Assembly: GCF_006345805.1 (NCBI RefSeq)
Contig: NW_021836453.1
Coordinates: 1-25,504, forward strand
Length of the DNA stretch: 25,504 bases
DNA from: Octopus sinensis
Lineage: Eukaryota
Reading direction: 5' to 3'
The position numbers and the translations under genes were made by a program. Below, piece by piece: positions 11,817 through 13,670 of this stretch; the stretch's first letter is position 1, and each line of letters begins with the position of its first letter. The notes beneath the pieces were generated by a model that saw only the letters and a list, made by a program, of their open reading frames with translations, was not told the origin of the DNA and made no database searches.

Positions 11817-12449
11817 AATATTATTACTATTTGGTGATGCCACTTAGTCTAAGATGGTAAGTGTTGCTTTAATGAAGTGTAAGTATCGCCAGTTCCTACG
11901 GAAATATTTGCTGATAACCAACTATTTTCATTAAGTGCTTGGATTAACTCATAAATCCAAATCCGATTTTTCCTCCATAAGTGTTTTACTCACAACCACT
12001 TCTCTGCAACCACTTCTCCTTCTCTCTCTTTCTCTTTCTCTTTCTCTTTTCACCCCCCTCTTTGCTTGTCTTATTACGAGGTCAATAACCAATCTAGAAA
12101 TTAATGAGAAATAAAATAATATTAAATTAAATTAATTTGATTTAATTTCAGTAACAATATGTGTCGTTATTGTTATTGTTGATGTTGTTTAATTTTCATG
12201 GCTGAAAATTTAGCATTTTAAAACTCTAAGATTATTTTTCATTCTCCTGTAACCTGTTGCTAAGTTTATCTCTCTCCCTCCTCTCTCTTTCTTTGAGTCC
12301 TCGACATTAGGTAAATAGAGGAATTTATATAAGTATAGTATAGGACAATCAGTAAGTTGTCATAATAGGACTCAGAGTTTCAAATACTGGAGCTAGAGCT
12401 AGAGTGAGTAACATATTTACACATATATATATATATCTGTAAAATAATA

Positions 12450-12890
12450 TGTGACAATTATTCAATAGCCAAGATAAAACTCTGAGTTTCGGATGCCGAG
12501 GTGGAAATCCACAACACCATCTCTTCTGTTATCTGGCCATATAAGAAATTCCCGTTCGAACATAGCATATGTGCATTCTCATCATCAGCTACCCAAGCGG
12601 ATATCATAATGGTTTCGACACCTGGATAGGACCGTTTAATCCGGTATTATCCATGGCGTTAGAAATAAAGACGTTTCCTGGGAAACCACCAGTTTATTAC
12701 TAAAAGTAATAATATAAGTGTAAACTAATAGTGATAACTTATGGCTACAAAGCAATAATTATAGCAAAGAATTGAACTAATTCCAGTAAGGTGATGCATA
12801 CAAGCACTCAGCTCTGAGTTGCGCTTCTTCTTATAGCAGAAACAGCTGAAAGCCAATGATTGCATAATTCCTGTTCCCTCGATATTTCCT
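12450..12890 (-). mobile_element. Putative Penelope-like pseudo-LTR / retrozyme-like non-autonomous element (boundaries approximate)
   Basis: Non-repetitive, CpG-containing segment between TA and GT microsatellites. It has several hairpins (12621-12656, 12673-12686, 12804-12822) and ends in the hammerhead motif. Type I hammerheads are known from Penelope-like elements and retrozymes. No RT or GIY-YIG ORF in the window. Confidence 0.4.
12465..12540 (-). ncRNA. Type I hammerhead ribozyme motif (this copy carries a U4A core substitution, probably inactive)
   Basis: Minus-strand RNA: AUGGCCAGAUAA CAGAAGA GAUGGUGUUGUGGAUUUCCACCUCGGCAUCC GAAA CUCAGAG UU UUAUCUUGGCUAU. Stem I is AUGGCCAGAUAA/UUAUCU(U)GGCUAU, 12 bp with one G.U pair and one bulged U. 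Core CAGAAGA versus consensus CUGANGA. Stem II is GAUG/CAUC plus GUGG/CCAC. GAAA follows, then stem III ACUC-A-GAGU and U17. The order matches type I topology. Confidence 0.75.
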
Positions 12891-13099: not shown

Positions 13100-13445
13100 C
13101 CTCTTGTTGTTGCTGTTGTTGTTGCCATTGTTCTTGATGTCAATGGTAACGGTGGCGAGGTGGTGTCGATGGCGGTGGAAACAGTGATGGTGGTGGTGGT
13201 GGTAGTAAGGGTGATGGATGGTGGTGATATTAATGTTGGTGGTGGTAGTGGCTGTGGTAATGGCGGCGGCGGCGGTGGTGGCAATGGCTGTGATAGTGTT
13301 GGTGGTGGTGGTGGTGGTGTTGGTGGTGGTGGTGGTGGTGGTGGATGGTGGTAATATTAATGTTGGTGGTGGTAGTGGCTGTGGCGATGGCAATGGTTGT
13401 GATGGTGGTGGTGGTGGTGCAGGTGGTGGTGGTGGCGGTGGTGGT
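13100..13445. repeat. GGT-rich trinucleotide array with internal duplicated block ATATTAATGTTGGTGGTGGTAGTGGCTGTGG
   Basis: The block occurs at ~13227 and ~13355. Confidence 0.9.
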
Positions 13446-13670
13446 GAATGCTATAACGTTTCTCGCGTTGGTGATGTGCTTGACAACTCGTTTCGCCGAA
13501 CTCTTTTAGACGTAACGCGACTCCGCCTTTCTCTTCGTTGTTATTGTTACTGTTATCAGCGGGTATTGCCATGTGCGGAACGGTATTTATAATGTCATTC
13601 GGTGGTACCCTGTGTGTTGTGTGTCTGTGTCTATGTTTGTTTGTGCGTGTGAATGAGTGTGTGTAACTGC

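What the first reader, a model, noticed from the sequence alone, without database searches (positions are those of the whole stretch)
12465..12540. Type I hammerhead ribozyme fold hidden on the minus strand
Seen: every hammerhead element is in the right order. Stem I has 12 bp with a single U bulge 6 bp from the core, then CAGAAGA, a 31-nt stem II domain (G-C closing pair, AUG/CAU, 5x5 internal loop, GUGG/CCAC with an AUUU loop), GAAA, stem III and U17. The predicted cleavage is between 12478 and 12477. Established: type I hammerheads occur in Penelope-like elements and retrozymes, and U4 is part of the conserved CUGANGA core. Inference: this copy has decayed (U4A, T at + strand 12527) from a self-cleaving family. 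The GUU triplet and long, internally looped stem II are less usual than GUC/GUA minimal motifs. I cannot tell whether this family is already described.
Basis: partly seen in the sequence, partly recalled or inferred. Interest (0 to 1): 0.85.

Follow-up and report, generated by a model that had tools for sequence, protein, structure and literature searches.

The report
Dead hammerhead in Penelope-like element tail
The 76-base fold is real: it is the worn-out self-cleaving "hammerhead" RNA motif in the tail of a very abundant Penelope-like jumping gene, and this copy is an ordinary dead fragment, although its whole subfamily carries an unusual change in the catalytic core.

Summary
The region is not single-copy. 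It lies in a 5'-truncated tail fragment, about 107 nt long (12434-12540), of a retrotransposon inserted at a (TA)n microsatellite.

Full-length copies encode a 708-aa protein whose predicted fold resembles telomerase reverse transcriptase. The protein has the sequence motifs published for the "Hydra" clade of Penelope-like elements (PLEs).

Related elements from four other assemblies carry a textbook type I hammerhead at the same 3'UTR position. They share the box GAAACUC(A/G)GAGU, and their helix II covaries. The motif is therefore a genuine PLE hammerhead homologue.

In this genome the 20-mer around the core occurs 3036 times. In a sample of 100, about 92% read CCGAAGA (C4). CUGAAGA accounts for 253 copies and the window's CAGAAGA for only 16. 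An older sister subfamily of 1195 copies is about 90% CUGAAGA.

The window copy therefore descends from a master that already had U4C, including the ORF-intact copies, and then gained a private C-to-A change. Rfam models do not detect it.

Verdict: an ordinary decayed member of a known kind. The prolific C4 subfamilies are a modest curiosity.

The parts
12529..12540 (-). Helix I, 5' strand (AUGGCCAGAUAA). This is also the 5' end of the truncated element copy.
   Evidence: Many other copies also end, or join an inverted partner, exactly at ATGGCC.
12522..12528 (-). Hammerhead core box 1, CAGAAGA (positions C3-A9), with A instead of U at position 4 (12527).
   Evidence: Genome-wide counts at this site: CCG about 92% of a 100-copy sample, CTG 253, CAG 16 of 3036.
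12491..12521 (-). The 31-nt helix II domain: GAUG/CAUC, an internal loop with weak UG/CG pairs, GUGG/CCAC with an AUUU loop, plus one extra C before G12.
   Evidence: Older subfamilies have the same architecture with an intact middle helix CGG/CCG.
12487..12490 (-). Hammerhead core box 2, GAAA (G12-A15.1).
   Evidence: It is part of the GAAACUCAGAGU box, which is shared with canonical hammerheads of related elements.
12478..12487 (-). Helix III (ACU-CAG-AGU) and U17. The nominal cleavage site is 3' of 12478. The near-palindromic CUCAGAG could form an extended helix III in a dimer.
   Evidence: self-duplex -9.8 kcal/mol. PLE hammerheads are reported to act as dimers (PMC4209133).
12465..12477 (-). 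Helix I, 3' strand (UUAUCUUGGCUAU), with a U bulge.
   Evidence: The bulge base varies between subfamilies (U or A) while the pairs are kept.
12434..12464 (-). Remainder of the element's 3' tail (UGAAUAAUUGUCACAUAUUAUUUUACAGAUA), the 'short-tail' form.
   Evidence: Homology to other copies stops at ACAGATA, where the TA repeat begins.
12423..12437 (.). (TA)n microsatellite at the 3' junction, the usual insertion target of this element family.
   Evidence: (TA)n targeting is described for Hydra-clade PLEs (PMC8557442).
12294..12385 (-). A second, older tail fragment from a related PLE family. It is truncated inside its hammerhead: it starts just before GAAACUCUGAGU and lacks box 1 and helix II.
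   Evidence: local alignment to L084, about 80% identity.

Best explanation
Window 12434-12540 (minus strand) is a dead, 5'-truncated copy of the 3' end of a Penelope-like retrotransposon of the Hydra clade. Its 3' end abuts a (TA)n microsatellite.

The 76-nt fold is that element's type I hammerhead motif in a lineage-specific form. It has a long, bulged helix I, a 31-nt two-part helix II, a 3-bp near-palindromic helix III and a GUU site.

In intact elements of this kind the motif lies in the 3'UTR/pseudo-LTR. The literature infers that it processes tandem or read-through transcripts, probably acting as a dimer through helix III. The encoded telomerase-like reverse transcriptase and GIY-YIG nuclease then copy the RNA into (TA)n sites. 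This often leaves 5'-truncated and inverted partial copies.

The subfamily that produced the window copy already carried C instead of U at core position 4 and a weakened helix II. The window copy added a private C-to-A change. As a lone fragment it has no partner copy and no promoter of its own, so it almost certainly does not cleave or do anything.

Shown: the repeat nature, the element identity, the homology to canonical hammerheads and the variant frequencies. Inferred: the processing role, the dimer mode and the inactivity.
For: - Copy number: at least 58 scored hits at 90-98% identity from 1475 first-look candidates. The core 20-mer occurs 3036 times, with 0 for the reversed control.
- Copies extend 5' into a roughly 3-kb element with a 708-aa ORF.
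- The AlphaFold model has pLDDT 89.7, and its top Foldseek hits are telomerase TERTs.
- The protein has RWK, DKT, YKDD, a CxCX5C linker, GIY-YIG-like YVGLTE...R..NH, CxxC and CxH, and no CCHH. These are the published Hydra-clade features, along with (TA)n insertion, a length under 3 kb and hammerheads.
- Tandem pseudo-LTR (L044) and inverted partial copies are present.
- Relatives at about 45% amino-acid identity carry CUGANGA-helix II-GAAACUC(A/G)GAGU-A|ACAG in the 3'UTR. Helix II covaries: GCGC/GCGC, GUGC/GCAC, CGCC/GGCG. One of them gives a sub-threshold Rfam hammerhead hit (24.8 bits against a gathering score of 48.5, E=0.0016).
- The L084-type family in the same genome keeps the same architecture with different helix I and II sequences and a CUGACGA core.
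- Rough ages, as divergence from subfamily consensus: A 2.4%, C 4.7%, B 7.3%.
Against: - No Rfam hammerhead model matches the window copy at E<=10, and none matches a CUGAAGA copy of the same family.
- Pfam and PDB sequence searches give nothing for the ORF. PLE membership therefore rests on the fold, on motifs read by eye and on the element's architecture.
- Within the family there is no covariation: 92.6% of cells are paired against 92.7% in shuffles.
- One extra C between helix II and G12 does not fit the textbook core.
- No cleavage or expression data exist here.
Confidence: 0.88

Rival explanations
1. The C4 (CCGAAGA) hammerheads of the young subfamilies are still catalytically competent in vivo, perhaps helped by the long helices or by dimerisation. 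On this view the window copy was inactivated only by its private C4A change, and the family is a natural U4C hammerhead class.
For: - C4 is fixed in the youngest and most numerous subfamilies and in all 12 ORF-adjacent copies examined.
- C4 also dominates subfamilies of the compact sister family.
- A U4C viroid hammerhead is reported to lose much activity in vitro yet still allow infectivity (PMC3088659).
- The fold is still within 0.7 kcal/mol of the MFE.
Against: - U4 is one of the most conserved core positions (established knowledge; PMC3088659).
- The same lineage also lost pairs in the middle of helix II, which looks like relaxed constraint.
- PLE clades without any hammerhead proliferate well (PMC8557442).
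- No activity data exist.
Confidence: 0.2
2. The short unit (hammerhead plus tail, starting at ATGGCC) is a separate non-autonomous element, SINE-like or retrozyme-like, mobilised in trans by the PLE, rather than a random 5' truncation.
For: - Many copies start exactly at ATGGCC or are joined head-to-head there. Examples are the window, L010, L020, L023, L029, L009, L012 and L026.
- Animal retrozymes are proposed to derive from PLE pseudo-LTRs (bioRxiv 10.64898/2026.07.22.740005).
Against: - Other copies extend by graded lengths upstream into the 3'UTR and ORF of the autonomous element, with the same sequence.
- No tandem direct array of units is present at this locus. The neighbouring fragment lacks the catalytic box.
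- My sample of 5' ends was biased towards the query's own extent.
Confidence: 0.12
3. The hammerhead resemblance is a coincidence in a structured retrotransposon 3'UTR whose real role is, for example, recognition by the reverse transcriptase.
For: There are no Rfam hits, the core is non-canonical, and there is no within-family covariation.
Against: - A canonical CUGANGA...GAAA hammerhead with the same helix III box lies at the same place in four related elements and in older subfamilies of the same genome.
- All elements occur in the correct order and topology.
Confidence: 0.03

Closest known systems
Hammerhead ribozymes of Penelope-like elements (Cervera & de la Pena 2014, PMC4209133)
   Same: - Type I topology and location in the flanking repeat or 3' end of a PLE.
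- A short, near-palindromic helix III that suggests action as a dimer.
- A larger-than-usual helix II.
- Thousands of dispersed, truncated copies, with pairs on opposite strands.
   Different: - Helix I here is 12 bp with a bulge, against 4-6 bp.
- Helix II is a 31-nt two-part domain with an extra C next to G12.
- The subfamily core is CCGAAGA, and CAGAAGA in the window, instead of CUGANGA.
Hydra clade of C-terminal-endonuclease PLEs (Craig et al. 2021, PMC8557442)
   Same: - A single ORF of about 700 aa in an element of about 3 kb or less.
- RWK and DKT motifs, a CxCX5C linker, and GIY-YIG without CCHH.
- (TA)n target sites, a tail extension at one end, and inverted or tandem partial copies.
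- A hammerhead in the 3' region.
   Different: - The paper reports canonical hammerheads as universal in the clade. Here the youngest subfamilies have a U4C core.
- This family's membership was judged from motifs and fold, not from a tree with the reference sequences.
Canonical compact hammerheads of related elements (L078, L091, L092) and the compact family in the same genome
   Same: An identical GAAACUC(A/G)GAGU box, type I order, the same 3'UTR position and a (TA)n junction.
   Different: - Those have a 4-bp helix II with a tetraloop, helix I CUGU/ACAG and a GUA site.
- The window's family has different helix I sequences, a GUU site and an expanded helix II.
Animal non-LTR retrozymes
   Same: A type I hammerhead of PLE ancestry carried on short non-coding units.
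   Different: Retrozymes are tandem direct repeats that give circular RNAs. This locus holds one core-bearing unit and one core-less fragment, and no array.

Membership tests
Hammerhead ribozyme, type I | Conserved core box CUGANGA (C3 U4 G5 A6 N7 G8 A9) | tested here: not met
   The window has CAGAAGA and its subfamily consensus is CCGAAGA. The feature is met only in the older sister subfamily (about 90% CUGAAGA) and in relatives.
Hammerhead ribozyme, type I | Second core box GAAA, the A15.1-U16.1 pair, and H (not G) at position 17 | tested here: met
   GAAA at 12487-12490, A15.1 (12487) paired with U16.1 (12479), and U17 at 12478.
Hammerhead ribozyme, type I | Three helices around the core, with helix I open (type I order) | tested here: met
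   The hammerhead-type structure scores -21.9 against an MFE of -22.6 kcal/mol. The helices are kept with different sequences in the L084-type family and in relatives. There is no covariation within the family itself.
Hammerhead ribozyme, type I | G10.1-C11.1 pair directly abutting A9 and G12 | tested here: inconclusive
   GAUG/CAUC pairs, but one extra C (U in D-type copies) lies between helix II and G12. Alternatively, G pairs with the last C and leaves a C bulge.
Hammerhead ribozyme, type I | Match to the Rfam covariance models (RF00163 and its clan) at the gathering score | tested here: not met
   There is no hammerhead hit, even at E<=10, for the window or for a CUGAAGA copy. A compact relative scores 24.8 bits against a gathering score of 48.5.
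Hammerhead ribozyme, type I | Mg2+-dependent self-cleavage 3' of position 17 | not testable with these tools
   This needs in vitro transcription or mapping of RNA ends.
Penelope-like element, Hydra clade | Single ORF with a telomerase-like reverse transcriptase | tested here: met
   A 708-aa ORF in L043 and L044. The model has pLDDT 89.7, and its top Foldseek hits are TERTs at E of about 3e-9. Pfam and PDB sequence searches were negative.
Penelope-like element, Hydra clade | C-terminal GIY-YIG nuclease lacking CCHH, a CxCX5C linker, and RWK and DKT motifs | tested here: met
   The motifs were read in P0001 and are invariant or nearly so in 35 homologues. They were compared with the description in PMC8557442. 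This is a match by eye, not by a profile.
Penelope-like element, Hydra clade | Insertion into (TA)n, with pseudo-LTR or tandem copies and inverted 5'-truncated copies | tested here: met
   (TA)n lies at the 3' junctions. Tandem copies occur in L044 and L091. Inverted dimers occur in many loci.
Penelope-like element, Hydra clade | Phylogenetic placement with reference Hydra-clade proteins | not tested
   Reference sequences (Repbase and the paper's supplement) were not available.
Non-LTR retrozyme | Tandem direct repeats of hammerhead-bearing units that yield circular RNA | tested here: not met
   The window contains only one core-bearing unit. The adjacent fragment lacks box 1 and helix II. 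Circular RNA cannot be tested here.

The most novel reading that the evidence does not exclude
The youngest, most prolific and ORF-intact subfamilies of two Hydra-type PLE families in this genome carry C instead of U at hammerhead position 4. This covers roughly 2,700 long-type and 3,000 compact-type copies.

The most novel reading not excluded is that these are a natural class of U4C hammerheads that still self-cleave in vivo, compensated by extended helices or by dimer formation. The other possibility, also informative, is that hammerhead cleavage is dispensable for PLE retrotransposition.
Probability: 0.2. Interest if true: 0.55.

Novelty: new member of a known kind. Interest (0 to 1): 0.3.

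Why it matters
For this locus it matters little. It is one of thousands of dead retrotransposon tails and should be masked as a repeat, not annotated as a ribozyme gene.

At family level the data offer a natural experiment on a standing question: what hammerheads do for Penelope-like elements.

- An older subfamily with a canonical core was succeeded by younger, more numerous, ORF-intact subfamilies with a U4C core and a weakened helix II.
- Either U4C is tolerated in vivo, or self-cleavage is not needed for proliferation.

The work also shows that the Rfam hammerhead models miss this expanded-helix II form even when its core is canonical.

Tried and rejected
- **Rfam.** The gathering-threshold scan of the whole window and the permissive scan of 12300-12700 gave no hammerhead hit. 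A scan of five whole loci returned only microsatellite-driven miRNA noise. A CUGAAGA copy also gave no hit.
- **Protein sequence searches.** Pfam on ORF pieces and on the full 708-aa protein gave nothing. Pfam on three relatives gave nothing useful. PDB sequence and profile searches gave only chance hits.
- **Within-family covariation.** Counts on 71 copies showed no signal above shuffles, as expected for young neutral copies. RNAalifold on 9 representatives gave only 2 compensatory pairs, and MAFFT misaligned the divergent family.
- **Alternative pairing.** I considered pairing of the CUGA box with the UCAG of the helix III loop. It appears in the MFE of the B-type. I rejected it as a conserved feature because the observed combinations (CUGA with UCGG, CCGA with UCAG) vary in the wrong direction.
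- **MITE or foldback transposon.** I considered this because of the inverted dimers. I rejected it because full-length copies encode the reverse transcriptase.
- **CUG copies as an active canonical sub-lineage.** I rejected this because copies matching the 20-mer with CUG are spread over several subfamilies, and CCA variants are similarly frequent in the sample.
- **Literature.** The supplementary tables of PMC8557442 are not held. No paper in the library treats cephalopod or octopus hammerheads specifically.

Full report
**1. The observation.**

Read on the minus strand, 12540->12465 is AUGGCCAGAUAA-CAGAAGA-(31 nt)-GAAA-CUCAGAG-UU-UUAUCUUGGCUAU.

- Helix I has 12 bp. A U bulge follows the fifth pair from the core.
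- The first core box carries A where U4 should be (12527).
- Helix II has GAUG/CAUC at its base and GUGG-AUUU-CCAC at its tip.
- GAAA follows, then a 3-bp helix III, and U17 is at 12478.

One C is left next to G12.

ViennaRNA gives an MFE of -22.6 kcal/mol (z = -2.06; 6 of 200 shuffles fold as well). The hammerhead-type structure lies 0.7 kcal/mol above the MFE.

No Rfam family matches the window at its gathering score. No hammerhead model matches 12300-12700 even at E <= 10.

**2. The genomic setting.**

The window belongs to a 2.72-Gb, 13,516-contig eukaryotic assembly and is packed with microsatellites. It has no long ORFs around the site.

A 241-nt query around the site found copies at 90-98% identity on most large contigs. 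There were 1475 first-look candidates, and the shared segment is window 12413-12549.

Copies end in a (TA)n run, have variable 5' ends, and are often paired head-to-head with an inverted partial copy. Some extend at least 1.4 kb upstream.

**3. The element.**

The upstream sequence contains reverse-transcriptase-like and GIY-YIG-like reading frames. A search with the GIY-YIG piece gave 18,402 first-look candidates and copies with open frames up to 717 aa.

Two such copies carry a 708-aa ORF, L043 and L044. About 200 nt downstream of the stop codon lies the same motif, followed by the tail and (TA)n. L044 also has an upstream direct copy, a pseudo-LTR.

Pfam and PDB sequence searches find nothing for this protein. 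An AlphaFold model built on 35 homologues is confident (pLDDT 89.7, pTM 0.85). Its best structural matches are telomerase catalytic subunits, followed by other reverse transcriptases.

The protein, and the invariant columns of its family, show:

- RMRWK and a DKT motif;
- FDIVxFY and Y(K/R)DD;
- a CxCX5C linker;
- YVGLTE...R..NH;
- CxxC...E and CxH, with no CCHH.

These are the features that Craig et al. (PMC8557442) give for the Hydra clade of Penelope-like elements. The same paper describes a length under 3 kb, insertion into (TA)n, hammerheads, a tail extension at one end, and tandem or inverted partial copies.

I did not build a tree with reference sequences, so clade membership is by motif and architecture.

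**4. Is the fold really a hammerhead homologue?**

I fetched DNA for six homologues of about 45-49% amino-acid identity from other assemblies. Four of them have a hammerhead with the shared box. L089 and L090 gave no such match in the scan.

- L078: GUUCUGU-CUGACGA-GCGC-UUAG-GCGC-GAAACUCAGAGUA|ACAGAG, with (TA)n about 45 nt downstream.
- L091: CUGAUGA-GUGC-GUAA-GCAC-GAAACUCGGAGUA|ACAG, in a tandem of 2513-nt units.
- L092: CUGACGA-U-CGCC-CCAA-GGCG-U-GAAACUCAGAGUA|ACAG.
- L077: CUGAUGA...GAAACUCAGAGUU. Unlike the others, this motif lies upstream of the ORF, at about 470-510 in the locus.

In L078, L091 and L092 the motif lies in the 3'UTR. Helix II covaries across the four while the box GAAACUC(A/G)GAGU is the same as in the window.

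L078 gives a sub-threshold Rfam hammerhead hit (24.8 bits against a gathering score of 48.5, E = 0.0016).

Within the window's own genome, a more distant family (L084) keeps the same unusual architecture: a 12-bp interrupted helix I, a long two-part helix II, an extra C before GAAA, and CUCAGAG. Its helix I (GUUGCCAUUAAUAG / CUAUAAUGACAAC) and helix II (AAUGU.../...ACAUU) sequences differ, and its core is a canonical CUGACGA.

This cross-family and cross-species pattern is the structural evidence. Within the family itself there is none: 92.6% of cells are paired against 92.7% in shuffles, with 1 compensatory cell. That is what young neutral copies should show.

Canonical Rfam-detectable hammerheads of other families also exist in the genome. 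One, at 48.2 bits, uses a GUU site too.

**5. The state of the core.**

Whole-genome exact pattern counts:

| Pattern | Count |
|---|---|
| AGATAACNNAAGAGATGGTG | 3036 (reversed control 0) |
| same, NN = TG (CUG) | 253 |
| same, NN = AG (CAG, the window's state) | 16, scattered |
| CTGANGA-N(4-34)-GAAACTCAGAGT | 4290 |
| CCGANGA-N(4-34)-GAAACTCAGAGT | 6015 |
| CCAANGA-N(4-34)-GAAACTCAGAGT | 321 |

Among the first 100 places of the NN pattern there were 92 CCG, 3 CTG, 3 CCA, 1 CAG and 1 CGG.

All 12 copies next to ORFs that I examined read CCGAAGA. Copies of this 20-mer with CUG are spread over several subfamilies.

The window's subfamily therefore descends from a master with C4. CUG and CCA look like the two CpG-decay products, and the window's A4 is a private change.

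The last three rows of the table show two groups sharing the box: the window's long-helix II group and a compact group. The compact group has U4 forms (CUGAUGAACGGCAACGAGAAAC) and C4 forms (CCGAUGAACGGCAACGGGAAAC, CCGACGAACGGCAACGUGAAAC).

Older long-type subfamilies appear in the CTG list but hardly in the CCG or CCA lists. The B-type pattern GATAACNNAAGAGATGGNGGCNTGG has 1195 copies, and about 90 of the first 100 read CTG.

Stem II CpGs are lost stepwise: GGCGGCG -> GGTGGCG -> GGTGGTG -> GGTGTTG, and CCCCGG -> CCTCGG -> CTTCGG. Rough divergence from subfamily consensus rises in the order A 2.4%, C 4.7%, B 7.3%. That sample is small and partly selected.

The simplest order is B (U4) -> C (mostly U4) -> A/D (C4). 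In this order the middle helix of stem II (CGG/CCG) degenerates along the way. Parallel CpG decay or template switching could complicate this picture, and I could not exclude either.

**6. Mechanism.**

Shown:

- the fragment is a 5'-truncated PLE tail at a (TA)n site;
- it starts exactly at the base of helix I, as many copies do;
- it has no partner copy; the only neighbour, at 12294-12385, is an older fragment of a related family truncated inside its hammerhead.

Inferred from the literature (PMC4209133; PMC8557442):

- PLE hammerheads sit in the pseudo-LTRs;
- they probably process tandem or read-through transcripts, working as dimers through a short palindromic helix III;
- they show low activity in vitro.

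Here two CUCAGAG segments can form a 10-bp duplex with a central mismatch at -9.8 kcal/mol.

With A at position 4, no dimer partner and no evidence of transcription, the window copy is best regarded as inert. Whether the C4 masters cleave is open. A U4C viroid hammerhead loses much activity in vitro but still supports infectivity (PMC3088659). PLE clades without hammerheads nevertheless proliferate (PMC8557442).

**7. Comparison and novelty.**

The kind of feature is known: a hammerhead in a Penelope-like element, Hydra clade, with (TA)n targeting and inverted or tandem debris.

New at the level of detail are the expanded helix I and II form, which Rfam misses even with a canonical core, and the dominance of a U4C core in the youngest subfamilies of two families.

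I found no paper in the library on cephalopod or octopus hammerheads. Repeat databases were not available to check whether the family is already catalogued.

**8. Verdict.**

This locus is an ordinary dead repeat copy. Interest is low to moderate (0.3). The U4C subfamilies are the only point worth a follow-up experiment.

Noticed in passing
window 12294-12385 (minus strand): A second, older tail fragment of a related PLE family (about 80% identity to L084) lies in the same orientation, about 40 nt beyond the (TA)n. It begins just before GAAACTCTGAGT, so it is truncated inside its hammerhead.
   Followed up: partly
L009, L012, L026, L003, L011, L022, L027 (around locus position 1500-1700): Tails occur as head-to-head inverted dimers joined at the base of helix I (...GGTTATCTGGCC|AGATAACC...). 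One arm ends ACAGATA(TA)n. The other carries an extension of about 70 nt, ending ...TTACCGTTTTTACCAA(TA)n. This resembles the one-sided 'tail' described for PLEs. Many solo copies, including the window's, start exactly at ATGGCC, which suggests a 5'-end hot spot.
   Followed up: partly
genome-wide; examples L079-L082: A compact sister family has the same GAAACUCAGAGU box and helix I CUGU/ACAG. It exists as a U4 subfamily (CUGAUGA A CG GCAA CG A GAAAC) and as C4 subfamilies (...CG G GAAAC and CCGACGA...CG U GAAAC), with thousands of copies each. The base before GAAA changes together with position 4. The reason is unknown.
   Followed up: partly
L083 (G000:C1:12149230-12149450): A further family has CCGAAGA-CUAGCCACACGCUU-GAAACUCAGAGUA. 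Many CCA variants of it appear in the CCA list, so an old family also had C at position 4.
   Followed up: no
L043 614-865: A palindrome of about 250 nt lies just upstream of the intact ORF copy. It appears to be an inverted duplication of the element's 5' end. It produced a spurious sub-threshold 'MIR2646' Rfam hit (100 bits against a gathering score of 245).
   Followed up: no
L031 3630-3986: An ORF fragment with a Helitron helicase-like N-terminal domain (Pfam PF14214, E=6.5e-10) lies about 3.3 kb upstream of a PLE copy. It is an unrelated transposon remnant.
   Followed up: no
window 13184-13446, and the window as a whole: A GTG-rich minisatellite with a 127-bp higher-order period. Overall the window gives 79 tandem-repeat rows ((AT)n, (CA)n, (TGA)n, (GATA)n and others) and GC content between 19% and 41%.
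   Followed up: no
homologue search with P0001: More than 900 homologues of about 700 aa (42-51% identity) sit on 2.2-3.7 kb contigs of many ENA, Logan and JGI assemblies. Most have no Pfam annotation; some have weak HTH_animal or DUF8422 hits. Hydra-type PLEs therefore seem widespread and poorly annotated in public protein sets.
   Followed up: partly
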